A stretch of DNA of 64,000 bases, taken from the IMG/VR virus record IMGVR_UViG_3300017987_000001, positions 62,001 through 126,000 of that record, one strand, 5' to 3'. Position numbers and translations under genes: made by a program. Below are positions 29,574-64,000 of this stretch, in pieces. The notes below the pieces were generated by a model. That model saw only the letters and a list, made by a program, of their open reading frames with translations, searched no databases and was not told the origin of the DNA. Every line of letters begins with the position of its first letter. Position 1 is the stretch's first letter.

Positions 29574-29632
29574 TCGTGTCCTCCTCGCGGCACAGACTGC
29601 AAGCATTGAATGCGACCTAAATTGGTATAGGG

Positions 29633-42524: not shown

Positions 42525-42537
42525 GGTTATCCCCCTA

Positions 42538-45534
<2,997 letters not shown>

Positions 45535-46695: not shown

Positions 46696-46712
46696 GGGTT
46701 CTCCTTATGCGG

Positions 46713-48697: not shown

Positions 48698-50059
48698 TTA
48701 ACCGCGAACCAGCTTGCGAACGGCATCCTTCAATGCCGCCGTGCTGCCCGCTGCTGCCTTCTTCACATGAGCCGCAGGCTTGGCAGCTGCTGGCTTCTCC
48801 TCCGCCATTTCCTCTCCGGCTAGTTCCTCAGCCTCACCAGCGCCCTCTTCGGCACCACCCAGTGCAGCCTCGGCCTCGCCTTCGGATTCCATGGCTTCAG
48901 GACCAGCGCCCTGCGCCTCTGCCACGACCTCGGCCAGCTCTTCGGGCGTGATGCCTGCCTCGTCGAGTGCCTCGGCCAACGCCTCAATGACGGCTTCGTC
49001 ATCGAGCCCCTCGCCGCCCATTTCGCCGCCTTCCCCGCCCGGCATGGCCCCTTCGGGACCACCACCGGCGAGGGCGGCCAGCGCGGCAGGATCCGGAGCG
49101 CCGCCTCCACCCATCATGGCTGCGGGATCTTCTCCCCCACCCATCATGGCTTCGGGACCAGCGCCACCAGCGCCGCCTCCTCCGAGTGCACCAAGGAGTG
49201 CAGCGGGATCTTGTGCTTCCTTCGTACCAGCCTTCTTCTTCAGCTGGCCATGCATGGCCTTCTGATAGCCCTGCATGAAGCCGACGTATGCGTCAGCGTC
49301 CGCCTCGGCCGTCTTCGTGATCTCACCGACCACGGTGGCGTAGACGTCGTCGCTCGCCTGCTTCTGCTGTCCACCGGCGAGGTAGTCGATCAGCATCGAC
49401 GCTGCGACGTAACCGGCCTCCTCGTCCTCGGGGAACTTCTCGGCAGCCTTCTTGTACAGCTCAGCAGAGTCGGCTGCCGCCTGCTTGTCATCCTGCTGAG
49501 CCGCCGGAGGGTCCGACTGCTCGCCCTCCTCCGCCTTCGGTTCTTCAGCCGGAGCTTCAGCGGGCTGCTCGGCCGGAGCCTCCTCGCCTGCTGCCTTCTC
49601 CGTCGGGATGTTGAGGATCTTCGCCATCTCGCCGAGGATCGAGTTCGCTTCACCGATCAGCTGATCGGCGCCGTACTTCGTCTTCGGGTTCGGGCCGACG
49701 GCGGCGTTGCTCGCCATCGAGGGCGTGCTCTTCGGCGTGTCGACATTGCCCGCGCGCGACTCATCCGACGACATGGACTGCGTGCCCATGGTGTCGGTAG
49801 GCTTCTTCGAGTCGCCCGGGGTGTTCTTGCTACCGGACTCTTCGACATTGTTCGGCACGTCCTTGGCGACGTCGGCCGAGTTCTCCGCAGAGCGCTCGCC
49901 TTCCTTCGCAGGCTTCGTGCCGTCATCGACGTTGGCGGACGGATGCGACGACTTTCCGTCGGATGCCAAATCGAGGTTGGCTGCAGACTTCTCAAGCTGC
50001 GCACGCTCGACCATCGCGTCCATCAGCTTGAGGATGTTGCCATTGGTCTTTCCCGGCAT
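48698..50059 (-). CDS. Scaffold/prohead core protein (453 aa)
   Basis: Acidic, disordered, Ala/Gly/Glu-rich with many KxA sites; follows the protease; ATG 50059 with GGAG RBS. Confidence 0.7.
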   Translation of the reverse strand: MPGKTNGNILKLMDAMVERAQLEKSAANLDLASDGKSSHPSANVDDGTKPAKEGERSAENSADVAKDVPNNVEESGSKNTPGDSKKPTDTMGTQSMSSDESRAGNVDTPKSTPSMASNAAVGPNPKTKYGADQLIGEANSILGEMAKILNIPTEKAAGEEAPAEQPAEAPAEEPKAEEGEQSDPPAAQQDDKQAAADSAELYKKAAEKFPEDEEAGYVAASMLIDYLAGGQQKQASDDVYATVVGEITKTAEADADAYVGFMQGYQKAMHGQLKKKAGTKEAQDPAALLGALGGGGAGGAGPEAMMGGGEDPAAMMGGGGAPDPAALAALAGGGPEGAMPGGEGGEMGGEGLDDEAVIEALAEALDEAGITPEELAEVVAEAQGAGPEAMESEGEAEAALGGAEEGAGEAEELAGEEMAEEKPAAAKPAAHVKKAAAGSTAALKDAVRKLVRG

Positions 50060-50117
50060 GGCACATTCTCCCATTCGTTAGAAGGTCTGGGGCGGTCGCA
50101 GAGATTGTTGAACGCGT

Positions 50118-51683: not shown

Positions 51684-52625
51684 CTAGACTGTCGGCCGCG
51701 CCCACGTCGGAAGTTCAAGCGGCTTGCCCTCTTCCGCGTACGCGCGGAATGGATCGAACGAGGGGCGACGAGGAAGCCGCTGCGCCTGCATCGCGCGGGC
51801 CTTCTCGGCGCGCATGAGCCGCGCCATCCACAGGTCAGCCTCGAACTGCCGCAAGCGCTGCTGCAGCTGCGTCTGTGCATCGGCGACAGACGAGCCGCCC
51901 GGACCATACCGAATCCGATTGCCTACGTAGCGTAGGATATCAGGCAGGAACATCGCAGCGATACCGGCAAGCCCACCGCGCTTGAGCGACGATGCGAGCG
52001 GCTTCGAGCTGGCCACGGTCTTCGCGGCTGCACGCATACGCTCGGGAGAAACCTTCTTGAGCGCGGACTGCAACTGAGGTGTCATGGACTTCGTAGCCTG
52101 CGCGAGTCGGCGCTTACGCAGCCACGGCCCAACGACGGGGATACTGTAGAGTCGACTACCGCTTCCCAGTACGTTCGACAGCTCTTTCTTCGAGAGGCCG
52201 GTCTTCGGGTTCGTGAGTGCCTCAGCGAGCGACAGAGTCTTCTTCTTGCCCGCAGCAAGCGTCGGGAGATCGGCACCGCGCAGCGCACCGCTGACAGTCT
52301 CGGCGAGCTGCGACTGCGTCATGGGGGAGAGTGTGCTGTGCAGCCCCCACGGCGTCGTGCGATAACCGTACGCCGCGCCCATACCAGCACCGGCTGCGGC
52401 AAGTCCGGGCATCAGATACTCGCGCGGCGGGTTCTTCTGCGTCTCGCGAATGTACTGAATGCCTTGCGGGATCTCTTCCAAACCACGTCGCAGTCGCCGA
52501 TTCAGCTCGCGCTGCGCATCCTGCGACTGCGTGAGGCTCAGATCTTGCCCAGTCCACATACCGGTCTGGGCTTCCTTCTCCATGCCAAATCGCGCGGCGG
52601 TGAACTTGTCGCCAAGCTCGCTCAT
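51684..52625 (-). CDS. Basic Gly-zipper membrane-type protein with N-terminal FGMEKEA (313 aa)
   Basis: ATG 52625 with GAGGAG; GLAAAGAGMGAAYG and GGLAGIAAMFLP segments. Confidence 0.7.
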   Translation of the reverse strand: MSELGDKFTAARFGMEKEAQTGMWTGQDLSLTQSQDAQRELNRRLRRGLEEIPQGIQYIRETQKNPPREYLMPGLAAAGAGMGAAYGYRTTPWGLHSTLSPMTQSQLAETVSGALRGADLPTLAAGKKKTLSLAEALTNPKTGLSKKELSNVLGSGSRLYSIPVVGPWLRKRRLAQATKSMTPQLQSALKKVSPERMRAAAKTVASSKPLASSLKRGGLAGIAAMFLPDILRYVGNRIRYGPGGSSVADAQTQLQQRLRQFEADLWMARLMRAEKARAMQAQRLPRRPSFDPFRAYAEEGKPLELPTWARPTV

Positions 52626-52626
52626 C

Positions 52627-53604
52627 CTATACTCCTCGTCCACGCGAAATGGCGAGATCCATCATCCGTGCGATGTCTGGATCGTTCGCATACAGATCCA
52701 TAAGCGGATTGCCCTTGCCCTTCACGGGCCGCGCAATAACCTCTTGCAGGAACTTGCGCATACGCGCGATCTCCTCGCGATTGCCGCCGAAGCGTCCGGT
52801 GAGAAGACCAACCCGCTGCGAGAAGTCGAGCGCGGACATCTTGCCACGCGCGAAGTCGCGCTTCAGCTTCGCGAGTCCTTCGAGCTGCGGAGCCGCCTGT
52901 CGGTAGATGTTCAGTCGGTTGGAGATGCGACGACCGAGCGCGGCAAGCGCCATGCGCTGCTCTGGTGTGCGCAGCTGCCCCGCTTCAATGCGCTGAATCG
53001 CATGCTCAACTGCTGCCTTCATATCCACATCGGGCATGACAGCGCGCATCGTACGAAGCCCGCGCAACGCGGCAGAAGGACTGCGGCTCATCAGCTTCTT
53101 CGCCGTGCGCTCGCCCAAGCGTATGCGCCGCTTCCAGCCCTTGCCGCTCGGCAGGACCGACTGCGTGAACTGCTGCACGAGTGACTGTTGCTCTTCCGGC
53201 GTGAAGCGACCGCGCCCAGCGAGAAGTGCTCCGAGTGCGCCTTCCGTCGCGCCCTCGAACACATCACCTTCACCGCTCACAAGTCGTCCGAGTGCGCCTT
53301 GGACCCCCGACTCATACGCCTTGCCGAGCTGCAGTCCGCGCTGAATCGGATTGGCGAGCGCATAGGCTGCCGTCGCGCCGGTGCCAAGACCACCCTTGAG
53401 CGCACCCGCAAGTGTGCCCGAAAGGATATCGCCGCCAGTAAGAAGCGCCTTACCGGCTCCGAGACCAGCGCCAGCCAACCCGCCAACGCCGCCGAGCCCG
53501 AGTGACTTCAAAAGCAGGTTCGGATCGACCTGCGGATCGAACTCGATGTCTTTCGCGTGTGTTGGCTCCGGAGGAAGCGTACCCGGAACAGGCTTCTCGG
53601 GCAT
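52627..53604 (-). CDS. Gly-zipper protein (325 aa)
   Basis: LGLGGVGGLAGAGLGAG..GTLAGALKGGLGTG hairpin followed by a basic helical domain. Confidence 0.7.
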   Translation of the reverse strand: MPEKPVPGTLPPEPTHAKDIEFDPQVDPNLLLKSLGLGGVGGLAGAGLGAGKALLTGGDILSGTLAGALKGGLGTGATAAYALANPIQRGLQLGKAYESGVQGALGRLVSGEGDVFEGATEGALGALLAGRGRFTPEEQQSLVQQFTQSVLPSGKGWKRRIRLGERTAKKLMSRSPSAALRGLRTMRAVMPDVDMKAAVEHAIQRIEAGQLRTPEQRMALAALGRRISNRLNIYRQAAPQLEGLAKLKRDFARGKMSALDFSQRVGLLTGRFGGNREEIARMRKFLQEVIARPVKGKGNPLMDLYANDPDIARMMDLAISRGRGV

Positions 53605-53606
53605 GA

Positions 53607-54077
53607 CTATTCCTTCTGATCAGGCATTGACACCAACGGAAGCTCTTCCGGTTCGGAGACTGACTTCAGGCCCTTCTCAACCTCGACGAGCTGATTGGCC
53701 TCGAACGGCTCCATCGCATCCTGCTGCTGCAGCAGCTTACGCAACTGCCCGCGCATCACAGCAGGCTGCACCGACGAGCGCGGTACGAGCTGTGAAACCT
53801 GATTGAACGCGTCGAGCACCTCGTCCGGATCGTACGTGCTGATCACCGGATCGTTCGCGAGGAAGTCGTTGAGCATCGCCTGCATCTTGATCCTGCGCAT
53901 CTCTGCGTCGTGCGTAGGGTCGAACAGCTCGCCGATCATCTTCTCTTCCGTCTCTTTTGGAGACGGAGGCTTCCCCGCCGTCAGCCGCTTCTTCAGCTCA
54001 CCGGCAACGCTGCCGATACCGACGAGGTCCATAATGCCTGCGTCCTTCTCGAAGAGATCATCTAGTTCGTTCGACAT
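53607..54077 (-). CDS. Helical head-associated protein (156 aa)
   Basis: Coupled start; LFEKDA near the N-terminus. Confidence 0.7.
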   Translation of the reverse strand: MSNELDDLFEKDAGIMDLVGIGSVAGELKKRLTAGKPPSPKETEEKMIGELFDPTHDAEMRRIKMQAMLNDFLANDPVISTYDPDEVLDAFNQVSQLVPRSSVQPAVMRGQLRKLLQQQDAMEPFEANQLVEVEKGLKSVSEPEELPLVSMPDQKE

Positions 54078-54079
54078 GG

Positions 54080-55249
54080 TTATTCCTTGACGAACAGGTC
54101 ATCCAGATCGTGCGACTTCTTCTCGGAAGCGCCGCACATGCTGTGCGCTGCCGCGACTGCCTGATCCTGTGGCATGCCGTGGTCGCGATTCAGACTGATC
54201 TTCCGGCTGATGCAGTCATCAGTCGACTCGCCCTTACGCTTGTACTTCTTCTTCGCCGCCTTCGCCATGAGCGCGTTGTAGATCTGTCGCACATGCTCCT
54301 CGCGATTGTCCTCAACCAGCGCCGCTTCCTTCGCGTAGCCGTCGAGGCCGTAGCTGATCGCAGCGAGCACCGGTTGCGGCGGCAGACAGCTCAGGTTCAG
54401 CATGGCGTGCTGGTGCTTCACGTGATTGATCGCTGCCGCTTCCTTCAGCAATCGATCGATCTGCTGTGATAGGAAGACCGCCTCCGCGACCTTGTCGTAC
54501 GGCTCGGCCGTGTCATCGTAGAACATCTGCTGCGCGCCGAGATCTTCGTCCGCCGCGCGCTTGACGTGCAGCTTATCCTGTCCGAGGTTGCCGTGCTCGT
54601 AGACCATGTCCATCGCAATCTTACCGAGCGGGCCGAACGTTGCAACCGCGCGCTTCTCGACGAGCGCGAACGGCTCCTTGTTGCTCGTCGAGCGCCAGTA
54701 GGCAGCAGCCTTGTCGAGCGTATCGAAGAAGCGCATGTACACGTGGTGATACGCCTCAAGCGCCTGCTTGTGTAGCTTCTCGATCTTCTCGTGCTCCTGA
54801 ATCGCCGACTTGGCTGTCGCTTCAGGATCACGATCATACGCTGCTGCCTTCTTGTCGGTAAGCGGCGGGAGTTCCTCGACCTTCGCTTCCTTCGACATCT
54901 CCATGAAGTTGACGCGCTGGCCACCCTCGTAGAGAGGATTCAGCGCAGACGCGGCCTTCGTCGCGGGCGTCTCCGGCTCGGCCGGGTAGAGCGCGCCGAG
55001 GATGTTCTCGATGCTCGCGATCGGGAATGTGTCGGCCCGAGTGTCCTCATTCGCGTGCTTCAGGTGCGAGAGCGTCTTCGACACGTTGAACGCCTCGACC
55101 ATGCGCTTGATGATCTCGGGCTGGAACTCGTAGTCATTCGCGACCTTGGTGAGCGCGTCGTCAGGGGTCGAGCCGTCGTTGGCCATCTTCACGGCCTTTT
55201 CGAGAGCTTCAACGATCTTCTGCTCGGTTGCCTTGGGCATATCCTTCAT
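54080..55249 (-). CDS. Helical KxA-rich internal head protein (389 aa)
   Basis: At least nine KxA sites; C-terminal DCISRKI...QDQAVAAAHSMC minidomain. Confidence 0.7.
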   Translation of the reverse strand: MKDMPKATEQKIVEALEKAVKMANDGSTPDDALTKVANDYEFQPEIIKRMVEAFNVSKTLSHLKHANEDTRADTFPIASIENILGALYPAEPETPATKAASALNPLYEGGQRVNFMEMSKEAKVEELPPLTDKKAAAYDRDPEATAKSAIQEHEKIEKLHKQALEAYHHVYMRFFDTLDKAAAYWRSTSNKEPFALVEKRAVATFGPLGKIAMDMVYEHGNLGQDKLHVKRAADEDLGAQQMFYDDTAEPYDKVAEAVFLSQQIDRLLKEAAAINHVKHQHAMLNLSCLPPQPVLAAISYGLDGYAKEAALVEDNREEHVRQIYNALMAKAAKKKYKRKGESTDDCISRKISLNRDHGMPQDQAVAAAHSMCGASEKKSHDLDDLFVKE

Positions 55250-56100
55250 TGCTTGCTCTCCTTGCTGACCTCGACGGCTTCAGGCTTCACTTCTTCCTTC
55301 GGGCTGATAGCAAAAATGTTGGACGCATCCGGGAGCATCCTGCGATGCTCCACTGGTTCGATCCTGTCCGTCGTCTTGCGCACGGTGAGTGATACGGCTT
55401 CGAGCAGCGCCGAGATCGAGGCTTCAGCCTGATCCGCGCCGCGCAGGTTGTCGGACTCGGACTCCAGCCGCAGCAGGTCGAGACCCTTACCCATCAGGTC
55501 GACGCTGTTGAAGTTGTTCGGCTGAACCGCGAATGCCGCACTGCGCGCAACCTTGATCACCTGCTCGCGGAACGTGCGCACGATGAAGTCCATCGCCACG
55601 GGCGACACATCGCCGATCTCCCAAACGCTGCGGACTATGTCCCAGCCGCCCTCGTACGCAATCAACTTCCACATGAAGTCCGGATCGCTTGCACGCGCGC
55701 CAGCCGTGAATGCCGGGAGCAGCACGTTCGCCGTGATGCATCCCTTGTGTTCGAGCGCGTCGCGCACGTCGAAGAAGAGCTTCTCGTAGGTATTGAGCAC
55801 CTTGACCTCGGCGTTGAGGTACTCGGCCATGTCTTCGACCGACTGGTTCGCCATGACACCGGCCTCGAAGATCCAGCGCGAGCCAGCCACGTCTTCGAAC
55901 AAGCACTTCGCCTGATGCAGGTCCGGGTACTCGCCCGCCAACATCTCCTCGACACGCGGATCATCACGCCGATAGCGACGAAGGTAGCGCCACGCCCGCG
56001 TGACGAACGTGTCGTCACGCGACCGACGGGGTGGGAGCTTCTTCTCGATCAGCTCCTTCGCCCGCAGCCATCGCCATCGTGGTGATTGGTTGAGTTTCAT
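55246..56100 (-). CDS. Hypothetical protein (284 aa)
   Basis: ATGA-coupled on both sides; globular helical sequence. Confidence 0.75.
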   Translation of the reverse strand: MKLNQSPRWRWLRAKELIEKKLPPRRSRDDTFVTRAWRYLRRYRRDDPRVEEMLAGEYPDLHQAKCLFEDVAGSRWIFEAGVMANQSVEDMAEYLNAEVKVLNTYEKLFFDVRDALEHKGCITANVLLPAFTAGARASDPDFMWKLIAYEGGWDIVRSVWEIGDVSPVAMDFIVRTFREQVIKVARSAAFAVQPNNFNSVDLMGKGLDLLRLESESDNLRGADQAEASISALLEAVSLTVRKTTDRIEPVEHRRMLPDASNIFAISPKEEVKPEAVEVSKESKQ

Positions 56101-56297
56101 ACCTTCATAGCCGGACGCGTGATGAGGTCCGTCCTTTCGAAGTTCCGGCGACGGTGATTGCTGCGCATGCCGTCACGGCGCGGGATGAGCGCCGACGGCT
56201 CCTTGCTGAGCGGCTCCGCCGCACAGCCCAGTGCCGCTCGCTTGAGCAGCCCGAGCTGATATCCTATATCATAAGCTACGTTAGTCTCCACCGCCAC
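56097..56297 (-). CDS. Small protein consisting mostly of the targeting-like motif AYDIGYQLGLLKRA (66 aa)
   Basis: Fills the gap, coupled to neighbours, shares a motif with the 57880 and 59841 genes. Confidence 0.65.
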   Translation of the reverse strand: MAVETNVAYDIGYQLGLLKRAALGCAAEPLSKEPSALIPRRDGMRSNHRRRNFERTDLITRPAMKV

Positions 56298-57609
56298 CCC
56301 CCAGCAGCCGCTGAATCAGTGCGATCGCCAGAAGCGTGCCGAGCGTGAGACCGCCGCCTCCCACGAGCTTGCTGATCGTCGGATCGTCCGACCACTTACC
56401 GAGGGTCGACCGTGCACCTTCCCAGCCCATGCCACCGAGCAGGTCGCCCAGCCCGGACATGCCGGTGCTGCCGACATCGCCAAGGAAGCCGCCAAACTGC
56501 CCAAGATCGCCGAAGCCGGACCCACCTGCAGCGCGGGCGTTCATGATCTGCGCGACCTCGGGGCTGGCCATGGTCGTAGGCGCTGCGCCGCCCTCAAGCA
56601 GCTTGGAGAGTCCGTAGCCGCCTCCAAGAACGCCAGCGGCAGCGCCGCCGCCGTACTTCGCCTTCTGCCACGGCGTAAGCCCGCCCCACCACTGGGCAGC
56701 CCCTCCGGGCGCAGCTGCGGCCTGAAGCACGGCCTCAGGGACCGGCGCTCCAGCGATGGTTTGCAGCGTAGGGTCTGCTGTCCCCACGCGGGTAGCGGGA
56801 CCGCTAGGTCGCGCCTGCCGTCTGGTCACTTTGGGCGATTGAAACTTCCGCCTCGGCTTTGGCGTTGGCTTCGGCTTCGCTTTCCCGCCAAAGATGCGCG
56901 ACCAGCCCTCGCGAAACTTCTTGGTGCTACCCACCATCGCGCGTCCAGCAGCTTCCTTGGCCGTCTCGTTCTCGCTCGTCTTCGGCTCGGGCTTCTTCTC
57001 CGGAGCCTTCTTCGGCTTCTCGTCCGACGCGGATTCGAGCTTCTCGACACCCGGCTTCGTCGGCTTCTGTGTTTCCTTCGACTTCGTGTCGCGCGTCACG
57101 TCGTGGATGCCACCGATCTTGTTCAGCACGTTGCGCACGCTCGCCGTCGTCACCTTCGGAGGCGTCGCGGGAGCTGCCTTCGCGGGCGTCATCTTCGGCA
57201 TCGCCGCGAGGCCGCCCGGCGGACCCTTCGGAGTGGCCGTCGGCTTGGGTGCAGGCGGCTTCGGTACTGCCGGAGTCTTCGGAGCTGCCGCAGGAGCGGG
57301 CTGTGCGGGTTGCGCCGGAGGCACAGCGCCTGCGCTCATCTTCTCAAGTGCCTCATTGATAGCCGAGGCCGAGACGTTCAGCCGTCGTGGGGCGTTCGTG
57401 CTCAGGTTCAGCTGAGGGACCATGCCCTTGGTCGGGCCGCGTGCAGGAGGAGCGTTCTCAATAACGCGAGGGCGCCCGGGGCCGCGTACCGTACCGGCAA
57501 TCGCGGGCACCGACGTGTTCTTGGTCGCCGGAACGGTCGTCTTCGTAGCCTCATCCGCCTTCTTGGTGAAGGCATTGACGAGTACGCGACGTGCCTTAAT
57601 CAGATCCAT
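56281..57609 (-). CDS. Pro/Lys-rich disordered protein with C-terminal Gly-zippers (442 aa)
   Basis: GAGGAGG RBS; AFTKKA, LEKMSA, KEAA; two hydrophobic Gly-rich helices. Confidence 0.7.
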   Translation of the reverse strand: MDLIKARRVLVNAFTKKADEATKTTVPATKNTSVPAIAGTVRGPGRPRVIENAPPARGPTKGMVPQLNLSTNAPRRLNVSASAINEALEKMSAGAVPPAQPAQPAPAAAPKTPAVPKPPAPKPTATPKGPPGGLAAMPKMTPAKAAPATPPKVTTASVRNVLNKIGGIHDVTRDTKSKETQKPTKPGVEKLESASDEKPKKAPEKKPEPKTSENETAKEAAGRAMVGSTKKFREGWSRIFGGKAKPKPTPKPRRKFQSPKVTRRQARPSGPATRVGTADPTLQTIAGAPVPEAVLQAAAAPGGAAQWWGGLTPWQKAKYGGGAAAGVLGGGYGLSKLLEGGAAPTTMASPEVAQIMNARAAGGSGFGDLGQFGGFLGDVGSTGMSGLGDLLGGMGWEGARSTLGKWSDDPTISKLVGGGGLTLGTLLAIALIQRLLGGGGGD

Positions 57610-57880
57610 CGTTTTCCTCCTCAGCGACAGCGGAGACCTTCGCGATCAGATCCATGAGAGGAACCTGATACTCCGGGTCATCCTCCAGCAGTTTACGCTC
57701 GTTCCGAACGTGATCGGCCAGCTCGGAGTAATCACGAAGCAGCTCATCTGCCGCTTCCGCCATGTGCCCCATGCACAGCCAGAAATGCTCCGGGTACCCC
57801 TGCTTCGACTCGTGCAGAAGGATCTCCGCCTGTGCGAGATGCTTCCGTGCGCAGTTCAGGCAACTCGGGCGCATAGTCAC
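57596..57880 (-). CDS. Small Cys/His helical protein (94 aa)
   Basis: CLNCARKH...H..C.GH..EA.DE, possibly a metal site. Confidence 0.7.
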   Translation of the reverse strand: MTMRPSCLNCARKHLAQAEILLHESKQGYPEHFWLCMGHMAEAADELLRDYSELADHVRNERKLLEDDPEYQVPLMDLIAKVSAVAEEENDGSD

Positions 57881-59358
57881 TAGAACCCTACCGTGGTCTC
57901 TGAACCCTTGTGCGCCTCAAGCAGCTCCTTCGTCAGATCTTCCGGCGATGCCTTCTCTACAGGCCCGCGCGTTGACTTCTCGCCCTTCTGCGCCGGGAAA
58001 TGCATCCCCTGCTGCTGCTCCAGTCGCTGATTGAGCTGCTTGATCAGCGCCTTCTGCTCCTCTGGCGTCATCGCGTTGATTTCGTCCATCGATGGCATTC
58101 CCGCCGATTCCGAGATGGACGTTTCTGCCTCCGCCTTTGGCGGCTTCTTCGGACCGGCAGGCTCATCGTGCTGCTTTGCCGCGCCCGGAGGTGCAACTGT
58201 CGCAGCCTCTGCAGCCTCGGCACGACCAGCGACCGACTCTTCTGCCGCTGGCGCTTCTTCCGGTGCCGCCTTCGGTGCTTCTTCCGCAGGAGCCTCACCA
58301 GCGCCCTCGCCCCTGCCCTTGAGGTAATCATAGAGACCATAGCCGCCCGCGCCAACACCAGCACCGGTCAGGATGCTGAGCAGGAAGTTGCGCTTCCGCT
58401 TTGCCGCCTGCTCGGGCGTCTCATCCTCACCGCCACCGAGCATGCCGGGAAGCCCGGCAAGAAGTCCAAGGCCGCCACCGAGTCCACCGCCGACCAGATA
58501 CGGTCGGATCTTCTGCAGCAGCCCGCTCCAGTCGAGCGCGCGCTTCACCATGCCGAGCTTCGCGCCGACATCGAACGCGGTCTTGGGGTCCATGTTGTGG
58601 CTCGCATTCTTCATGAGTTCACGAACGAGAATCGGGAGGCCGCCCATGGTGCCTGCGCCGAGCGCACCGCCACTCAACGCTGCGATAAGTGGCACGCCGT
58701 ACGACTGGAAGTTCGTCGGCGCGAGATCTTGGTAGAGCGCCTCTTGCCGCGCGGGGTCATCGGGATGCGAGAGCGCTGCCTGCCGTCGCGCGCGTGCCTT
58801 GTTCTCAGGAACACTGAGCGCGGTAAGGCCGCCCAGTCCACCCGCACCGAGAAGCGCACCAATGATCGTGCGGCTCGTATCATCCTCCAGCAGCTTACCG
58901 ATATCGAGAGCTTTCTTTTGCATAGGTACTCCAGCTGACTGAGACTTCCCAAACAACTCCGGCAGCTTCTCCATATGGAGGCGAAGATCCGTCTTGTCCC
59001 CGAAATCGGGAAGCTCTGGGACATTCGGAAGCGGGTACATCGGTCCCGTTCCCATCGACTCTCGGAAGCGCTTCACCCAGCTGAGATCCTTGAGCGGCTG
59101 CACTGCCTTGTCAAAGCCGCCACCGGCCAGATACCCACCGCCGATACCAAGCCCCGCCCCAGCAAGGATACCAGCAAGGTCACCGGCAGACATCTGATCA
59201 CCATGGAACTTCGCCATCTGCTCGGCGGCTTCCGGATTATCCCGGAGAATCTCCTTGATGCGTTCTCGATTCTGCTTGCGACGACGATGCACGAGATACG
59301 TCATCAGCCCAGCGCCGCCAACGCCGCCGAGAAGTGCTCCCAGATTCTCAGACTTCAT
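57880..59358 (-). CDS. Polyprotein-like protein with three Gly-zipper hairpin modules separated by KxA sites (492 aa)
   Basis: Three pairs of GxxxG helices; QKKA, MKNA and AFDVGAKLGMVKRA fall at module boundaries. Confidence 0.75.
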   Translation of the reverse strand: MKSENLGALLGGVGGAGLMTYLVHRRRKQNRERIKEILRDNPEAAEQMAKFHGDQMSAGDLAGILAGAGLGIGGGYLAGGGFDKAVQPLKDLSWVKRFRESMGTGPMYPLPNVPELPDFGDKTDLRLHMEKLPELFGKSQSAGVPMQKKALDIGKLLEDDTSRTIIGALLGAGGLGGLTALSVPENKARARRQAALSHPDDPARQEALYQDLAPTNFQSYGVPLIAALSGGALGAGTMGGLPILVRELMKNASHNMDPKTAFDVGAKLGMVKRALDWSGLLQKIRPYLVGGGLGGGLGLLAGLPGMLGGGEDETPEQAAKRKRNFLLSILTGAGVGAGGYGLYDYLKGRGEGAGEAPAEEAPKAAPEEAPAAEESVAGRAEAAEAATVAPPGAAKQHDEPAGPKKPPKAEAETSISESAGMPSMDEINAMTPEEQKALIKQLNQRLEQQQGMHFPAQKGEKSTRGPVEKASPEDLTKELLEAHKGSETTVGF

Positions 59359-59365
59359 GCGTATC

Positions 59366-59382
59366 TCCAGACAGGCAGGCAG
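59366..59382. repeat. 17-bp inverted repeat, left arm TCCAGACAGGCAGGCAG
   Basis: Exact reverse complement of 59824-59840. Confidence 0.9.
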
Positions 59383-59388
59383 TGCCTG

Positions 59389-59802
59389 TTATATCTTCTC
59401 GACCGTCTTACCGGCGTCGTTCATCACATACGCCGGAGACACAAAGGCTACAAGCTGCTCAGCGCCGTTCGCTTTGTGCAACACCGCAACATGAATCGGC
59501 TTGCGGAGCGCTCCGTGCGACTCGAAGATCTCACCCGCGTACAACGGGTCCACAAGCAGATCGTGCTTGTTATCCGGTCCTCCGATGTCCACCCCAAGCA
59601 GGATTGGTACACGCTTGGCTTTCGGCGGAGCGTTCGGATCATTCGACTGCGGTTCGTCCTGCTCCCATTCGTACAAGGCAAGCTGTGTGTTCGGGTCGCC
59701 GATCTCGCCAAAAACCCCGAGCCACATCTTGCCCAACTCGACCTTGTCCGACTCGTACATCACCCAACGGCTCGTGTTGTAGTCTACCGTCTTCAGAATC
59801 AT
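59389..59802 (-). CDS. Hypothetical beta-rich protein bracketed by inverted repeats (137 aa)
   Basis: ORF ending AYVMNDAGKTVEKI; no KxA targeting helix or Gly-zipper, unlike its neighbours. Confidence 0.7.
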   Translation of the reverse strand: MILKTVDYNTSRWVMYESDKVELGKMWLGVFGEIGDPNTQLALYEWEQDEPQSNDPNAPPKAKRVPILLGVDIGGPDNKHDLLVDPLYAGEIFESHGALRKPIHVAVLHKANGAEQLVAFVSPAYVMNDAGKTVEKI

Positions 59803-59823
59803 GACTGCCTGCCTTCTATCTGT

Positions 59824-59840
59824 CTGCCTGCCTGTCTGGA
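59824..59840. repeat. 17-bp inverted repeat, right arm CTGCCTGCCTGTCTGGA
   Basis: Exact reverse complement of 59366-59382. Confidence 0.9.
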
Positions 59841-60545
59841 CTACTTGAGCGCTATCGGGTCTAGCGCGGTACGAACGTTCGTTGCAATGTTCTCAATACC
59901 CTTTCCGACACCATAACCGAGCAGTCGGCCGCCACCGTAACCAAGCGCGCCGTAACCAAGCCCCTTCAGCGGCACACCGATGAGATCCTTCCAGACTGGT
60001 CGGCGCACCTTAGAGTACAGCGCTTTGGCTCGCGCCTTGTCGCCGCCGCTCGCAATAAAGGCCATACGCCGATCAGCTTTCCGTCGGCTAAGTGCGTGCA
60101 TCAGCGCGGCAAGAAGTCCGTAGGTTCCGGCCACTCCACCATACAACTTGCCGGTACTCTGCGACATGCGAGTACTAAGCCGCTCAGGAACAGGACGCAG
60201 TTCGGGTTCGGGCTTGGGCGCGGCTGGTGCGGCTGGTGCGGGCGTACCAGCCTCAGCGGACTGGGAGAACATCGCTTTTAGCGCATCCAAGTATCCGCCA
60301 TCCGGAGCGAGCTTGTCTTTGTAGATTGCAGGAGTGAGTGCAGTGCCGCCGAGACCGCCTACCGCACCGCCGATCATTGCGTTGCGTAGGATCTTCGAGA
60401 GCTTGTCCTTCTTCGAGAATAGGCCAGTCAGCGCGCCAAGCCCGGCACCCCCGAGCGTCGTCATCAACGGGATGCTCGATGGGTTGATCTCCGCGCGCTT
60501 CGTGAGTCCAACCATGTAGCCGAGCGCGATCGCTTGATTCGACAT
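59841..60545 (-). CDS. Two-module Gly-zipper protein with N-terminal AIALGYMVGLTKRA (234 aa)
   Basis: ATG 60545 with AAGGAG; four Gly-rich hydrophobic helices. Confidence 0.75.
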   Translation of the reverse strand: MSNQAIALGYMVGLTKRAEINPSSIPLMTTLGGAGLGALTGLFSKKDKLSKILRNAMIGGAVGGLGGTALTPAIYKDKLAPDGGYLDALKAMFSQSAEAGTPAPAAPAAPKPEPELRPVPERLSTRMSQSTGKLYGGVAGTYGLLAALMHALSRRKADRRMAFIASGGDKARAKALYSKVRRPVWKDLIGVPLKGLGYGALGYGGGRLLGYGVGKGIENIATNVRTALDPIALK

Positions 60546-60554
60546 TGCCACTCC

Positions 60555-62897
60555 TTAGAGGATCTGCTCCAGCTCTGCCTCAGCCGTCGCGTCGCTGACG
60601 TCCGGCTCGATGGTCTTCTGCTTCAGGAACAGCGTCAGGTCGCCGAGGTTCTCGAACACGTTGTTGAGGTTGTCCTCAAGCTCCGGCATGTCCTGCGAAC
60701 CGTAGCGATCCTTGAACTTATCGAAGTGCCAGTAGTACATGAACTTGATCCGACCAATGCGATCGAGGCCGAGCATCAGATCGCTGAGGTACTGATCGAC
60801 GACAGTGTTCGGATCCATCGACTTCACAAGCCCGGAGATCACGCTCGTGTCGAGCACTTCCTTCTGCCCCTGCGCAGCGGCCTGCTGCGCTTGGAACGTC
60901 GCGTCCATGTCCATCGTCGTCGCGCCGTAGCGATCGAGTGGGGTCTCGTTCGCCGAGACAAGCTCGTCCTGCGGATACATGACGCGCGGGTTCGTGAAGA
61001 GCGTCGGGTCGGTCGACGTCATCGGCTCCTGCAGCGCAGGTGCGAAAGGCTGCGCGTGCTTGACGAAGAACTTCGGTGAGCCGCTGCGGCGAGCCTGCTT
61101 CAGGATGCCATCGGCGTCGGCTTCGCGCATGCGATAGTCGATAACGAGCTTCTTGAGCGCGGCAATCTTGCTCATCGGACGTCCGATGTTGCCATTATCG
61201 CGCACCCACCACTCGATGCCGTCGGTGACGGCCTGAATCTCGCGGACGTTCGCACTCTTGAAGATGCTCAGCTCGATCTCGGCGATCGACTGTGGTGTGG
61301 CCATATCGTCCAGTTCGGCCTTGCGCCGCTTCTCTTCTCTGCGCGCCCAGTCGCTATCGGGGCGATCGAGCTTCCACGGCTCGATCATATCCTTCGACAG
61401 CTTGATGACCTTGAAGCCGTTCGGCACGAAGTAGTCGCTGCCGATCTGCGTGATGTTGTTGCCGGGCTTGTTCGTGATGACCATGCACTTATCGTAGCGT
61501 CCGCCGCCCTCAACGATGTTGTCGTAGCGACTGTACTTCGCATCCGACACATTGAAGGTCTGCCCACGATACGGCGGATAGAGCAGCTTCTTCATCTTCT
61601 CGTCGGCGTTGCGTGCGCGCGGCCAGTTGTCGAACTCGCCGTAGAGCGTGGTCCGGCCGTCTGCAACAACGCGGCGCTCGACGAAGAACGGTACGGAGCC
61701 ATCACCCTTCTCGTTGACGAAGATGACCTTCTGCCGCTCGGACACAGAGCTGGGAGCGGGAAGACCGTCGAAGACCTTCTTCCATTCGTCGAACTTGTGA
61801 CCCTCATTATCGACGAAGACGTTCTCCTTGTTCGTCGTCATCATGCGCCCGGACTTCGGGTCGACCACGGTCACGTTCCCGCGATCGTAGTCATACATGC
61901 ACTCGGCACCCTTGGGGTCGAGCATGACGAGCCGCTGCTGATACGAGCCATCAGCCATGAGCACGCGACAGTACGAACTGCAGTGAGGGTTCTGCAGCGT
62001 CTGCGAGATGCGCGTCGAGTAGACCGTCGAGGTCTCGTCATCTCCACGATTGTCGCGCACGACATAGCGATCACGCTGGAGGCGCTCCTTCTCGTCCTCG
62101 CTCAGCATCGTGTCATCGAGATCGAGCACGTTCGCACGATCGGCGATCATGATCTGGACGTCGGGAGCCGTGTCCTCGATCATCTTGTCGCCGTCAGCCG
62201 CCTTCTTCTCCATGGGTTCGGCGACAAAGGCTTCCTTCGCTGCTTCGAGGATAGCATCCATGTCGTAGATGCTGAGCAGACTGTCGGTGAATGCCGCGTT
62301 CTTGCGCATCGTAGCGAGCAGCACACGTGCAGCGCTCCAGCCAGCATCCTTGATGAAGCTTGGGAGATCCCACTTGTCGCGCAGCGCCGCGCGCTTCTCG
62401 CCGCCCGGGGGGCTCATGATGACGTGCAGGAAGGGCTTGAAGTCGTCGGCTATCGTGGAGGACAGGTAGTCCGTCAAGCCACGCAGCGACTGATCGCTCG
62501 CATACTTCGACCCGGTGTACGGGGGCCGAGCCATCGCGTTGAAGTCGGGCTGCTGGATACCCATCTCGCCCGGCGTCATCTCCTCGGTCTCGCCGAGAAT
62601 ATGCGGACGACGGTTGAGGAGGTAGTTGATCCAGTTCTCCTGCAGCGGAACGAAGGCGTCCTGACTCTTCAGGTAGAGCAGGTCGTCGCCCTTCAGCTGA
62701 CCGTTGAGGAAGAAGACGGGGGCGTACATCCACTCGTCCCCGACGCTGAAGCCCCACACACCGACGGCGTGCGTGTTGTCTTCGCTCTTATCGAGGAGCT
62801 GGAAACCTACCAGATGGTCCAGCAGGCCGGGCGCGCGGTCACGAAGGCGAGCGTGCGCGAGGTCAGCGAATGTTCGTTCGAATTCTGCATCTGGCAT
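60555..62897 (-). CDS. Large multidomain head-associated protein (780 aa)
   Basis: Long ORF with RBS; KxA sites (SKYA, EKRA, EKKA, FKSA, VKHA) at apparent domain boundaries. Confidence 0.7.
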   Translation of the reverse strand: MPDAEFERTFADLAHARLRDRAPGLLDHLVGFQLLDKSEDNTHAVGVWGFSVGDEWMYAPVFFLNGQLKGDDLLYLKSQDAFVPLQENWINYLLNRRPHILGETEEMTPGEMGIQQPDFNAMARPPYTGSKYASDQSLRGLTDYLSSTIADDFKPFLHVIMSPPGGEKRAALRDKWDLPSFIKDAGWSAARVLLATMRKNAAFTDSLLSIYDMDAILEAAKEAFVAEPMEKKAADGDKMIEDTAPDVQIMIADRANVLDLDDTMLSEDEKERLQRDRYVVRDNRGDDETSTVYSTRISQTLQNPHCSSYCRVLMADGSYQQRLVMLDPKGAECMYDYDRGNVTVVDPKSGRMMTTNKENVFVDNEGHKFDEWKKVFDGLPAPSSVSERQKVIFVNEKGDGSVPFFVERRVVADGRTTLYGEFDNWPRARNADEKMKKLLYPPYRGQTFNVSDAKYSRYDNIVEGGGRYDKCMVITNKPGNNITQIGSDYFVPNGFKVIKLSKDMIEPWKLDRPDSDWARREEKRRKAELDDMATPQSIAEIELSIFKSANVREIQAVTDGIEWWVRDNGNIGRPMSKIAALKKLVIDYRMREADADGILKQARRSGSPKFFVKHAQPFAPALQEPMTSTDPTLFTNPRVMYPQDELVSANETPLDRYGATTMDMDATFQAQQAAAQGQKEVLDTSVISGLVKSMDPNTVVDQYLSDLMLGLDRIGRIKFMYYWHFDKFKDRYGSQDMPELEDNLNNVFENLGDLTLFLKQKTIEPDVSDATAEAELEQIL

Positions 62898-63456: not shown

Positions 63457-64000
63457 TTACGAGCTGAACGCCCGACGGGCGTAATCCTCAAACTGGTTGC
63501 GCATCAGTCGTCGCTTATCCGCAACCATCATCGGCTCAAACTTCGACTGAATCTGCTCGGGCGACATGCCGGTCCATTTGCGCCAAAGTGGCGCTTCATA
63601 TGGCGGCGTCTGATCGTACTGCTGCGGCGGCATCATGAACGGCGGCGGTGGTGGCATCGGCCCGGCAGCCATCATCGGACCCGGGTAGCTTGCGAACTGT
63701 ATTCCCGGGCGCGGGCCGCGCGGCATCGACGGGGCCGGTCGACCCTTCGAGAACTCGGCGTAGCTGACCGGCGTGCGCTTCTTGACTTCTGCCTCACGCT
63801 CTTCGTCACGCTTCTTGCGCTCTTGCTCCTGCTGCATTCGCTGACGGAACATCAGCGTCTGCCACGGTGTACCCATCGACGCGAGATAGCGCTCAACCGT
63901 CGGTGTCACCCACGATGGTTTGGCGATCGGCTGGAAGTACGCTGGGTTAATACCGACATCTTTGAAGGTACTGACCAGCTCGGGTGGCAGCGACTTCATT
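63457..64000 (-). CDS. 3' part of a Pro/Met-rich protein, probably starting beyond the window
   Basis: Frame open to the window edge; composition like its neighbour. Confidence 0.55.
   Translation of the reverse strand, partial: MKSLPPELVSTFKDVGINPAYFQPIAKPSWVTPTVERYLASMGTPWQTLMFRQRMQQEQERKKRDEEREAEVKKRTPVSYAEFSKGRPAPSMPRGPRPGIQFASYPGPMMAAGPMPPPPPFMMPPQQYDQTPPYEAPLWRKWTGMSPEQIQSKFEPMMVADKRRLMRNQFEDYARRAFSS

What the first reader, a model, noticed from the sequence alone, without database searches (positions are those of the whole stretch)
51684..60545. Family of Gly-zipper membrane hairpin modules, each preceded by a shared A[FY]xxGxxxG[LM]xKxA leader
Seen: a longer leader is shared by AYDIGYQLGLLKRA (~56235-56276), AFDVGAKLGMVKRA (~58538-58579), AIALGYMVGLTKRA (~60492-60533) and, more loosely, FTAARFGMEKEA. 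It usually precedes GxxxG hairpins (GALLGGVGGAG, GGGLGGGLGLLAG). The 492-aa gene reads as a three-module polyprotein. Inference: the leader is a capsid-targeting helix (analogous to the T4 internal-protein targeting sequence) removed at KxA, releasing many small membrane-inserting proteins. These could build an ejection conduit, a membrane compartment around incoming DNA, or superinfection-exclusion/anti-defence effectors. I cannot match this expansion to a described system.
Basis: partly seen in the sequence, partly recalled or inferred. Interest (0 to 1): 0.85.

Follow-up and report, generated by a model that had tools for sequence, protein, structure and literature searches.

The report
Shared leader on phage head proteins
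In the head-gene block of an uncultured giant bacteriophage, several otherwise unrelated glycine-rich proteins begin with the same ~20-residue leader, which is probably a protease-removed tag for loading proteins into the capsid, as in phage T4 but with a different, undescribed recognition motif.

Summary
The leader is real. The strict pattern occurs 3 times, in frame, at the stated coordinates (0.0008 expected). Two more strong copies and one weaker copy lie just beyond the window.

The proteins resemble each other only in the leader. In each leave-one-out test, the omitted copy is the best new hit.

The leader's last five residues (hydrophobic-x-K-x-A/G) form a wider motif:
- It is enriched about 3-fold in this phage's head genes, but not in its tail genes.
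- In about 80 related giant-phage contigs and in cultured Salmonella phage Arash, it is enriched in the protease, scaffold and two core-like proteins.
- It sits at one conserved site near the capsid protein's N-terminus and one in a disordered linker of the protease.
- It is 5-8 times denser in the first 25-50 residues of variable head-block proteins than further along them.

This is the signature of a prohead-protease recognition motif with capsid-targeting propeptides, as in T4 and phiKZ/SPN3US. No cleavage was observed.

The glycine-zipper segments are real, but only marginally hydrophobic and not always paired with a leader. The 492-aa protein has two motif sites exactly between its three hairpins. 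Membrane function is untested.

The adjacent 780-aa gene is not a detectable portal.

Verdict: a new variant of a known kind.

The parts
59841..60545 (-). B236 (234 aa from the ATG): N-terminal leader followed by two glycine-zipper pairs
   Evidence: ORF. The gene call of 234 aa is, and the ribosome-binding site before the ATG is. It has two strict zipper segments. It has no homologue in the 5.8-billion-protein collection.
60492..60533 (-). Leader copy AIALGYMVGLTKRA in B236
   Evidence: Strict regex match. Leave-one-out score 11.0 bits, the top non-training hit.
57880..59358 (-). D492: three glycine-zipper hairpins and a C-terminal tail; candidate polyprotein or gene fusion
   Evidence: ORF. 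It has six strict zipper segments in three pairs, with motif sites at residues 146 and 270 between the pairs. It is an orphan in the protein collection. The Atlas structure model is poor, pLDDT 0.49.
58537..58578 (-). Internal leader copy AFDVGAKLGMVKRA in D492. A Met codon at 58591-58593 sits at the same -7 offset as the start Met of the other leaders.
   Evidence: There is no ribosome-binding site before this ATG, so it is more likely a fused former start than an internal start.
58909..58923 (-). MQKKA site between hairpins 1 and 2 of D492. The following residues, ALDIGKLL, resemble ALDWSGLL after the full leader.
58054..58071 (-). Second shared short motif, MTPEEQ, in the D492 tail
   Evidence: [MFLW][TS][PE]E[EQ][QIAK] is found in five proteins of this phage, all in coding frames, against 4 matches in 890,000 residues of relatives.
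56097..56297 (-). G66: leader followed by a 45-residue basic tail, with no zipper
   Evidence: called as a gene. Leave-one-out score 20.8 bits.
56235..56276 (-). Leader copy AYDIGYQLGLLKRA in G66
56281..57609 (-). F442: short N-terminal helix ending in FTKKA (residues 14-18), a long Pro/Ala/Lys-rich region, and a C-terminal glycine-zipper segment (residues 415-433)
52627..53604 (-). K325: glycine-rich protein with an FTPEEQ motif and no leader
51684..52625 (-). L319 (313 aa as called): loose leader MSELGDKFTAARFGMEKEA. It occupies the slot directly upstream of the protease, which in relatives holds a protein with a leader and one glycine zipper.
   Evidence: Orthology rests on position and architecture only. 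The profile of the relatives' slot proteins does not match it significantly.
52569..52598 (-). Loose leader core AARFGMEKEA in L319
50118..51587 (-). M506: probable prohead maturation protease, with a conserved L-R-K-V-A site in a predicted disordered linker after the catalytic domain
   Evidence: tblastn matches genes annotated as prohead or capsid maturation protease, and Arash gp222. It matches PHROG 18299 weakly. T4 gp21 and herpesvirus proteases appear among weak fold matches. K237 is nearly invariant and A239 invariant, and pLDDT is below 50 for residues 224-259.
48698..50074 (-). N458: scaffold-like acidic Ala/Gly-rich protein with five motif sites. Its relatives carry the leader-like stretch AGYELAAQLGLNKEAAE mid-protein.
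47602..47616 (-). MEKTA site near the N-terminus of the major capsid protein (gene 46756-47670)
   Evidence: PHROG 2522 major head protein. The site lies at residues 20-30 in 40 of 50 homologues and at residue 25 in Arash gp226.
54080..55249 (-). I389: conserved head-block protein with seven motif sites (0.74 expected), homologous to Arash gp220
60555..62897 (-). A780: conserved large head-block protein, homologous to the abundant Arash virion protein gp218; not a detectable portal
   Evidence: In Arash the annotated portal is a different gene, gp204.
63457..63999 (-). C-terminal part of U297 (296 aa). Its N-terminus, with the leader MNRLQAYELGLCVGIEKSG and a glycine-zipper segment, lies just beyond the window end.
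   Evidence: A relative, L010, keeps the N-terminus MNKQAFEMGLCVG (13.2 bits).

Best explanation
The window is the head and tail gene block of an uncultured giant myovirus of about 208 kb. RNA polymerase genes are interleaved with its head genes.

The leader is a roughly 20-residue N-terminal propeptide with two parts:
- A helix, M-x5-A-[FY]-[ED]-h-G-x-x-h-G, which is inferred to dock the protein into the assembling prohead core, like the T4 capsid-targeting sequence.
- A terminal hydrophobic-x-K-x-A/G motif, which is inferred to be the recognition site of the prohead protease encoded 0.1-9 kb downstream (M506).

The same short motif marks the capsid protein's N-terminal arm, the scaffold, two core-like proteins and the protease's own linker. 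One protease would therefore trim or degrade all of them during head maturation.

In this phage the leader has been copied onto at least six fast-evolving, otherwise unrelated proteins. Several of these are rich in glycine-zipper segments. D492 would be cut at two further sites into three hairpin peptides.

The mature proteins are inferred to stay inside the head and leave with the DNA. What the glycine-zipper parts then do is not known. Insertion into the host membrane is the leading guess.

Shown here: the motifs, their positions, their enrichment and their conservation. Inferred: cleavage, the exact cut position, packaging and any membrane action.
For: - The leader is real and its copies recognise one another. 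Similarity between its carriers is confined to it. T4 internal proteins show the same pattern: a shared targeting sequence on divergent mature parts (PMC9026906).
- The leader sits at a fixed distance from the start, with the acidic position at residue 7-8.
- Counts of hydrophobic-x-K-x-A/G are 31 observed against 9.3 expected in the head region. In the other 46 kb they are 13 against 11.7.
- Across the relatives the motif is enriched 3-5.5 fold in homologues of A780, I389, the protease, the scaffold and the capsid protein. It is not enriched in RNA polymerase beta' or H284.
- In the A780, I389, protease and scaffold homologues the forward motif is 4-15 times commoner than its reverse, and 2.4-10 times commoner than its K-to-R or K-to-E variants.
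- One site is conserved at capsid-protein residues 20-30 in 40 of 50 homologues.
- One site has a nearly invariant K and an invariant A in a protease linker predicted to be disordered.
- In 768 variable proteins from about 80 loci the motif density is 9.1 per 1000 residues in residues 1-25 and 6.25 in residues 26-50, against 1-2 further on. 164 of 768 carry it near the start, against 20 of 1106 decoy ORFs.
- The same register, E-L-[GA]-x-x-h-[GVA]-x-x-K-x-A, starts variable head proteins in distant relatives (two in L084, L069, L008). It also occurs inside the scaffold of about 35 relatives. The count is 41, against 2.7 in shuffled and 5 in reversed sequences.
- The protein directly upstream of the protease carries a leader and a glycine zipper in 40 of 69 relatives.
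- Phage Arash has the same gene order and the same motif pattern: 8 sites in its 255-aa scaffold, and none in its portal, helicase or tail proteins.
- Arash glycine-zipper proteins gp213, gp221 and gp224 were reported in purified virions (PMC10585845).
- The two motif sites of D492 fall between its three hairpins.
- Short N-terminal propeptides of 20-24 residues are known from SPN3US (PMC10052503).
Against: - No cleavage or virion data exist for this phage.
- The Arash proteome lists 116 proteins, including ribonucleotide reductase and primase, so contamination is possible. No peptide-level data are available.
- Related proteases of the T4 and phiKZ type cut after Glu in L/I-x-E or A-x-E. The leaders also contain A-[FY]-[ED] at residues 6-8, so the cut could be there instead, or as well.
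- Some small proteins begin directly with M-x-K-x-A. This fits a binding motif better than a propeptide boundary.
- Assignment of the protease to a fold family is weak. The best PDB matches have E>0.4, and T4 gp21 reaches a TM-score of only 0.45.
- The resemblance between the leader and the scaffold stretch is not significant in independent profile tests (6.5 bits against a decoy maximum of 4.6; no significant hit).
- Enrichment counts across relatives include orthologous, non-independent sites.
- K325 has no leader at all.
Confidence: 0.5

Rival explanations
1. The motif is a docking peptide, not a cleavage site. The leader and the scattered hydrophobic-x-K-x-A copies bind a pocket on the inside of the capsid shell, the scaffold or the protease, as cargo-loading peptides do in encapsulins. 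They are not removed.
For: - Some proteins start directly with M-x-K-x-A.
- The motif occurs many times in proteins that stay abundant in Arash virions, such as gp218 with 1149 spectra.
- The leader weakly resembles a conserved scaffold stretch.
Against: - Conserved sites lie in the protease's disordered linker and in the capsid protein's N-terminal arm. Both are typical cleavage positions.
- Scaffolds carry many copies, as degraded scaffolds do in T4.
- Encapsulin peptides are usually C-terminal and have a different pattern (from general knowledge, not tested here).
Confidence: 0.2
2. The glycine-zipper proteins are membrane anchors for prohead assembly and are not packaged. The leader would plug into the prohead core, the zipper would sit in the inner membrane, and protease cleavage would release the prohead. 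T4 and SPN3US proheads are known to assemble on the membrane and to detach after proteolysis.
For: - T4 and SPN3US heads assemble on the inner membrane and are released only after proteolysis (PMC9026906; PMC10052503).
- A leader-plus-zipper protein directly upstream of the protease is position-conserved in 40 of 69 relatives.
Against: - The Arash analogues gp213, gp221 and gp224 were found in purified virions.
- The segments are too weakly hydrophobic for efficient insertion during translation.
- An anchor role does not explain an expansion to about ten such proteins, or a three-hairpin polyprotein.
Confidence: 0.12
3. The glycine/alanine-rich stretches are not membrane segments. They are disordered, space-filling parts of an internal head core or inner body, and the zipper pattern is a by-product of composition in a 60% G+C genome.
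For: - The scaffold-like protein N458 and U257 are also Gly/Ala/Pro/Met-rich without being hydrophobic.
- None of the segments has a negative Hessa-scale insertion energy.
- The D492 model is poor, pLDDT 0.49.
- The strict zipper test also fires in 161 of 4552 non-coding-strand ORFs.
Against: - The segments are charge-free 19-residue blocks that come in pairs separated by strongly basic loops. That looks like a helical hairpin rather than a random coil.
- Multi-segment proteins are concentrated in B236 and D492, not spread across the window.
- There is a weak Gly-zipper_YMGG match.
Confidence: 0.15
4. The proteins have nothing to do with virions. They are membrane proteins for lysis, superinfection exclusion or defence evasion that happen to lie in the head block, and the leader is a membrane-targeting helix.
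For: - The genes from B236 to G66 are an insertion absent from all sampled relatives. Accessory genes often behave this way.
Against: - The same leader and motif occur on non-zipper proteins, on the scaffold, on the capsid protein and on the protease.
- All the genes are co-oriented and tightly packed with head genes.
- There are no matches to lysis or defence families in Pfam or PHROGs. PADLOC was not searched.
Confidence: 0.03

Closest known systems
T4 capsid-targeting sequence (CTS) of internal proteins IPI-III, cleaved by the prohead protease gp21
   Same: - A short N-terminal sequence is shared by internal head proteins whose mature parts are unrelated.
- It ends in the protease's recognition motif, and that motif also marks the capsid protein, the scaffold and the protease itself.
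- The genes sit beside the protease, scaffold and capsid genes.
- Cargo genes turn over rapidly between relatives (PMC9026906).
   Different: - The leader is about 20 residues, not 10.
- The motif is hydrophobic-x-K-x-A/G, not L/I-x-E.
- There is no sequence similarity to T4 proteins.
- The cargo is glycine-zipper-rich rather than small basic soluble proteins.
- Cleavage and packaging are not shown here.
phiKZ / 201phi2-1 / SPN3US head maturation (protease gp175 / gp245, motif S/A/G-x-E or A-x-E; inner-body and ejection proteins)
   Same: - These are giant myoviruses with a virion RNA polymerase and many internal, ejected head proteins carrying N-terminal propeptides.
- Short propeptides of 20-24 residues exist.
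- The protease cuts itself (PMC10052503; bioRxiv 10.1101/2024.03.24.586471).
   Different: - There is no match to the phiKZ internal head protein domain PF12699.
- A different candidate motif is involved, although A-[FY]-[ED] at leader residues 6-8 would also fit A-x-E.
- This is a different phage lineage. No GenBank phage matches the DNA or the 780-aa protein.
Salmonella phage Arash (orphan 181-kb myovirus) head module gp218-gp226
   Same: - Gene order is the same, with detectable homology for A780, H284, I389, the protease and the capsid protein.
- The hydrophobic-x-K-x-A pattern is the same in the scaffold, core-like proteins, the protease and the capsid N-arm.
- A glycine-zipper protein with an N-terminal helix and LLKAA sits directly upstream of the protease (gp221) and was reported in virions.
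   Different: - The relationship is very distant, at about 30% protease identity.
- Arash lacks the extended A[FY]xxGxxxG leader and the expansion seen here.
- The motif was not noted in the Arash paper, in the parts of it read here.
Pfam glycine-zipper families (Gly-zipper_YMGG PF13441 and relatives)
   Same: GxxxGxxxG runs in short hydrophobic stretches, often paired.
   Different: Only B236 matches, and below the curated cut-off (22.6 against 28.9 bits). The known families are small bacterial envelope proteins, not phage head-block proteins.

Membership tests
T4-type capsid-targeting propeptide system | A short N-terminal sequence shared by proteins whose mature parts are unrelated | tested here: met
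   BLAST similarity between the carriers is confined to the leader. Leave-one-out profiles recover each copy. The distance from the start codon is fixed.
T4-type capsid-targeting propeptide system | The leader ends in a motif that also marks the capsid protein, the scaffold and the protease (a common protease recognition site) | tested here: met
   Enrichment is specific to head proteins. Conserved sites lie in the capsid N-arm and the protease linker. This shows a shared motif, not cleavage.
T4-type capsid-targeting propeptide system | The leader is removed by the prohead protease | not testable with these tools
   No proteomic data exist for this phage. The Arash paper gives no peptide-level data.
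T4-type capsid-targeting propeptide system | The leader is sufficient to load a protein into the head, and the cargo is found in virions | not testable with these tools
   The only evidence is indirect: Arash positional analogues gp213, gp221 and gp224 are listed in a virion proteome of 116 proteins.
T4-type capsid-targeting propeptide system | Sequence homology to T4 internal proteins or to the T4 cleavage motif L/I-x-E | tested here: not met
   No Pfam or PHROG hit for any carrier. The recurrent motif has Lys, not Glu.
phiKZ-like internal head proteins (PF12699) | Match to the Pfam domain | tested here: not met
   No match for any of the 20 proteins scanned.
Gly-zipper_YMGG (PF13441) | Score at or above the curated cut-off | tested here: not met
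   B236 scores 22.6 bits against a cut-off of 28.9. D492, F442, K325 and L319 have no hit.
Transmembrane helical hairpin | Segments hydrophobic enough for membrane insertion | tested here: inconclusive
   Kyte-Doolittle means are 1.0-1.8 over 19 residues. Summed Hessa-scale energies are all positive, with only two <=3 kcal/mol.
Prohead maturation protease of the T4 gp21 / herpesvirus assemblin kind (for M506) | Homology or fold match to known prohead proteases | tested here: inconclusive
   - tblastn matches genes annotated as prohead or capsid maturation protease in Rhodococcus and Gordonia phages at E about 3e-3 to 5e-3, Arash gp222 at 5e-28 and phage G gp19 at 2e-8.
- 5 of 27 homologues match PHROG 18299.
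- The fold search lists T4 gp21 (TM-score 0.45) and herpesvirus proteases only at E>1.
- There is no PDB sequence hit.
Phage portal protein (for A780) | Portal fold or family match | tested here: not met
   No Pfam or PHROG hit. The AlphaFold model (pLDDT 70) has no portal among 50 PDB matches. The Arash homologue gp218 is distinct from the annotated portal gp204.

The most novel reading that the evidence does not exclude
The expanded set of leader-tagged glycine-zipper proteins (B236, the three D492 peptides, F442, U297 and others upstream) is packaged in the head and ejected with the DNA and the virion RNA polymerase. The proteins then oligomerise in the host inner membrane. There they would build either the conduit through which the large protein cargo passes, or the phage-made part of an early membrane compartment around the incoming genome, like the early infection vesicle of phiKZ-like phages. 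This would be the first phage-encoded membrane component of such a structure.
Probability: 0.12. Interest if true: 0.85.

Novelty: new variant of a known kind. Interest (0 to 1): 0.55.

Why it matters
If the motif is the protease site and the leader is a loading tag, four things follow.
- A very large, so far uncultured group of giant phages gains a readable rule for which proteins enter the head and where they are cut. The 780-aa marker protein alone has 1868 clusters at 50% identity.
- The rule can be tested directly in the cultured relative Arash.
- A new tag could be used to load foreign proteins into giant-phage heads, as the T4 sequence already is.
- A set of candidate ejected, possibly membrane-active proteins is singled out for the open question of how giant phages protect and express their DNA in the first minutes of infection.

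If the motif is only a docking peptide, it is still an undescribed short linear motif organising head assembly.

Tried and rejected
- **Known relatives by DNA or marker protein.** Megablast of the region and tblastn of the 780-aa protein against 50,697 GenBank phage records found nothing.
- **Homologues of the carriers.** Word-indexed searches of B236 and D492 against 5.8 billion proteins found only the proteins themselves. phmmer against the ORFs of about 80 related loci found no homologues for C137, D492, E94, F442, G66, K325, L319, U422 or U297.
- **A780 as the portal.** I first treated the 780-aa protein as the portal because of its position. Structure prediction, a PDB fold search and comparison with Arash do not support that, so I dropped it.
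- **Leader derived from the scaffold.** A profile built only from the scaffold stretch of relatives does not find the leaders significantly. A leaders-only profile reaches only 6.5 bits on the scaffold, against a decoy maximum of 4.6. I kept this as a weak resemblance only.
- **Internal start in D492.** There is no ribosome-binding site before the internal ATG.
- **Homology of L319 or K325 to the relatives' slot protein.** Not significant.
- **Cleavage evidence from Arash.** The supplementary file holds only the gene table.
- **Protein Atlas.** The nearest clusters are unnamed viral proteins, with scores below 0.8.
- **Protease fold.** No significant PDB match.
- **tRNA scan.** None found.
- **Literature.** A search for a Lys-type prohead protease motif found nothing relevant.
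- **Portal elsewhere in the window.** PHROG and Pfam scans covered 22 of the larger minus-strand ORFs, including the ten largest remaining ones. No portal was found.

Full report
**Context**

The window is part of IMG/VR contig IMGVR_UViG_3300017987_000001, which is 207,857 bp long. All genes lie on the minus strand. It contains:
- a tail sheath, a tail spike and tail fibres and a baseplate wedge;
- a major capsid protein (PHROG 2522);
- a probable prohead protease, M506;
- a scaffold-like acidic protein, N458.

No GenBank phage matches the DNA or the 780-aa protein next to the finding. The same phage occurs on eight public contigs, and independent gene calls agree with my gene models.

**Genes in the finding**

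Going downstream on the minus strand, the order is:

| Gene | Coordinates |
|---|---|
| A780 | 60555-62897 |
| B236 | 59841-60545 |
| C137 | 59389-59802 |
| D492 | 57880-59358 |
| E94 | 57596-57880 |
| F442 | 56281-57609 |
| G66 | 56097-56297 |
| H284 | 55246-56100 |
| I389 | 54080-55249 |
| J156 | 53607-54077 |
| K325 | 52627-53604 |
| L319 | 51684-52643 |
| M506 (protease) | 50118-51587 |
| N458 (scaffold-like) | 48698-50074 |
| capsid protein | 46756-47670 |

**The observation**

Composition predicts 0.0008 matches.

Reading 10 kb beyond the window end (locus L001) shows two more strong copies. They lie at the N-termini of a 422-aa and a 296-aa protein. A copy one residue shorter starts a protein of about 495 aa.

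Aligned, the copies read M-x5-A-[FY]-[EDT]-h-G-x-x-h-G-h-x-K-[KRS]-[AG]. Five of six begin at the start codon with the same offset. The sixth, inside D492, is preceded by a Met at that same offset but has no ribosome-binding site, which suggests a gene fusion.

In each of five leave-one-out tests, the omitted leader is the best non-training hit among 116,000 residues. BLAST similarity between the carriers is confined to the leader.

Glycine-zipper segments are present: two in B236, six in three pairs in D492, and one in F442. However:
- they do not always follow a leader;
- some leaders have no zipper after them;
- on the Hessa scale none has a negative insertion energy;
- Pfam Gly-zipper_YMGG matches B236 only below its cut-off.

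**Relatives**

A full HMMER search with A780 found 1868 clusters at 50% identity. I fetched 79 IMG/VR loci and several metagenome loci with 10-kb flanks.

The conserved order in the group is:
1. RNA polymerase beta' fragment
2. variable protein(s)
3. A780
4. H284
5. I389 fused to J156
6. a variable glycine-rich protein
7. protease
8. scaffold
9. capsid protein

This order is shown. B236 to G66, K325 and L319 have no detectable homologues in these loci. The genes from B236 to G66 are therefore an insertion peculiar to this phage.

**A780 is not a demonstrable portal**

I first took A780 for the portal. Its AlphaFold model (mean pLDDT 70) has no portal among its PDB matches. It is homologous to gp218 of cultured Salmonella phage Arash (E 7.5e-18). 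gp218 is an abundant virion protein, and the annotated portal of Arash is a different gene.

Arash gp218-gp226 is syntenic and homologous with the block from A780 to the capsid protein. Arash is therefore the closest cultured relative, at about 30% protease identity.

**The leader is the long form of a shorter, widespread motif**

The last five leader residues fit hydrophobic-x-K-x-A/G.

*In this window.* The motif occurs 31 times in the head region against 9.3 expected from shuffling. In the remaining 46 kb it occurs 13 times against 11.7. The richest proteins are:
- I389, 7 sites against 0.74 expected;
- the scaffold, 5 against 1.0;
- the protease, 4 against 0.67;
- two small proteins beside the capsid gene.

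The capsid protein has one site, at residue 19.

*Across the relatives*:

| Protein group | Enrichment |
|---|---|
| A780 | 4.0x |
| I389 | 5.5x |
| protease | 4.9x |
| scaffold | 3.1x |
| capsid protein | 3.5x |
| RNA polymerase beta' | 0.8x |
| H284 | 0.5x |

In the A780, I389, protease and scaffold groups the forward motif is 4-15 times commoner than its reverse. It is 2.4-10 times commoner than its K-to-R or K-to-E variants.

*Conserved sites.*
- In 40 of 50 capsid homologues the single site lies at residues 20-30.
- In the protease, one site has a nearly invariant K237 and an invariant A239. It lies in residues 224-259, which the model predicts to be disordered, between the catalytic and C-terminal helical domains.

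*N-terminal concentration.* In 768 variable proteins from these loci the motif density is 9.1 per 1000 residues in residues 1-25 and 6.25 in residues 26-50. Further along it is 1-2 per 1000. 164 of 768 proteins carry the motif near the start, against 20 of 1106 decoy ORFs.

*In Arash.* The pattern is the same:
- 8 sites in the 255-aa scaffold;
- 8 in gp220;
- 5 in the protease;
- one at capsid residue 25;
- none in the portal, the helicase or the tail proteins.

**The extended register in relatives**

The register E-L-[GA]-x-x-h-[GVA]-x-x-K-x-A opens variable head proteins in distant relatives (two in L084, L069, L008). It also lies mid-protein in the scaffold of about 35 loci, as AGYELAAQLGLNKEAAE. 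The count is 41, against 2.7 in shuffled and 5 in reversed sequences. Most of these are orthologous scaffold sites and so are not independent.

Independent profile tests of leader against scaffold are not significant. I therefore treat that resemblance as a lead only. A relative, L010, keeps the N-terminus of the U297 orthologue at 13.2 bits.

**The slot upstream of the protease**

In 40 of 69 loci the protein directly before the protease has one to four strict glycine-zipper segments. In the nearest relatives it is one family with this architecture:
- an N-terminal helix ending in K-x-A;
- a coiled coil;
- one zipper segment, G..LSGIPF;
- a second coiled coil.

L319 holds this slot and has the same architecture, but no significant similarity. 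Arash gp221 holds the same slot, has LLKAA at residue 19 and one zipper segment, and was reported in virions with 355 spectra.

Leader plus glycine zipper is thus an old arrangement in this group. The present phage has multiplied it.

**D492**

Its only two motif sites are MQKKA at residue 146 and MVKRA at residue 270. They fall between the three hairpin pairs. The residues after them resemble each other: ALDIGKLL and ALDWSGLL.

**Mechanism**

The pattern is the known signature of proteolytic head maturation in T4 (L/I-x-E, with 10-residue capsid-targeting sequences on otherwise unrelated internal proteins; PMC9026906). It is also the signature in phiKZ and SPN3US (A-x-E, with some propeptides of 20-24 residues and protease self-cleavage; PMC10052503). 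The shared features are:
- one short motif on the capsid N-arm, the scaffold, the core proteins, the protease itself and the N-termini of many fast-evolving head-block proteins;
- a protease gene next to them.

I therefore read the leader as a targeting propeptide that ends in the protease site, with confidence of about 0.5.

Not shown: cleavage, the exact cut position, packaging, and what the zipper parts do.

Caveats:
- Relatives of this protease type usually cut after Glu. The leaders also carry A-[FY]-[ED] at residues 6-8.
- Some proteins start directly with M-x-K-x-A.
- The protease fold assignment is weak.
- The Arash proteome is very inclusive, and no peptide data are available.

Rival explanations are a non-cleaved docking peptide, membrane anchors for prohead assembly, a disordered core filler, and unrelated accessory membrane proteins. 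They are weighed in the Rival explanations section.

**Novelty**

The kind of system is known. The candidate motif, the extended leader, its spread over at least six genes in one phage and its link with glycine-zipper proteins appear undescribed. They are not mentioned in the parts of the Arash paper I read, and one targeted literature search found nothing.

Noticed in passing
window 60555-62897 (-): The 780-aa protein next to the finding is the marker of a very large uncultured phage group (1868 clusters at 50% identity). It is homologous to Arash gp218, an abundant virion protein of unknown function. It has no portal-like fold. Weak fold matches are to tandem Tudor-like beta-barrels only. 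It carries 4.5 motif sites per protein across the group.
   Followed up: partly
window 58054-58071, 53188-53205 and 62950-63447 (O165); also L001:7280-8548 and L001:8548-9441: A second short motif, [MF][TS]PE[EQ]Q followed by a helix (for example MTPEEQKALIKQL), is shared by five head-block proteins of this phage: D492, K325, O165, U422 and U297. It is almost absent from relatives, with 4 matches in 890,000 residues. Its function is unknown; it may be a second docking motif.
   Followed up: partly
L087:3386-8884 and L001:5408-7270 (upstream of the window end): Multisubunit RNA polymerase genes are interleaved with head genes: a fused beta/beta' N-part of 1832 aa and a beta' C-part of 620 aa. 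In Arash the homologous subunits are the most abundant proteins in the virion proteome, which suggests a packaged, injected polymerase.
   Followed up: partly
L004:15508-18144; L072, L081, L060 and L052 protease ORFs (849-1301 aa); L004:1-3025: Several relatives carry insertions in the prohead protease gene. L004 has a weak Hom_end_hint match, so the insertion is probably an intein. L004 also has an intein in its RNA polymerase gene.
   Followed up: no
window 53607-55249 (-): I389 and J156 are two genes here, separated by a stop, two bases and a new ATG in another frame. They correspond to one fused protein of 460-500 aa in all relatives. The split is present on independent contigs of this phage.
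   Followed up: partly
window 46354-46704 (-); L001:2749-4239; L087:480-1937: A related helix motif with Cys or Phe, A-F-x-x-G/K-[FY]-x-x-K-[CF]-A-x-x-G (YLPAFMQKCASHGLTF, AFTAGVLRFCKSAGYD, AFKYGFYEKFAEAGI), recurs in other head-block proteins. It also occurs in relatives (L004 and L005 small proteins after the capsid gene; L035). It may be an older variant of the leader.
   Followed up: no
L087:2127-3386, L087:8995-9927, L087:52-468: More glycine-zipper-rich proteins lie upstream of the polymerase genes. One is a 419-aa protein with about four hydrophobic Gly-rich segments. About ten such proteins therefore surround the head and polymerase block.
   Followed up: partly
L001:1494-2267 (U257) and homologues at about 7 kb in many loci: A Pro/Gly/Met/Ala-rich protein has tandem MDPAMAGGAPP-like repeats. 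In relatives it has a conserved N-terminal helix ending in FEKSA at residue 16 (MFTVNPELIALAKARFEKSA). This is another clear example of a leader with a low-complexity body.
   Followed up: no
window 38490-42626 (-), 42538-45534 (-) and 28542-29606 (-): There is a 1378-aa tail spike with seven right-handed beta-helix repeats. A 998-aa tail fibre has an extensin-like proline-rich region. A glycosyltransferase-like gene sits among the tail genes.
   Followed up: no
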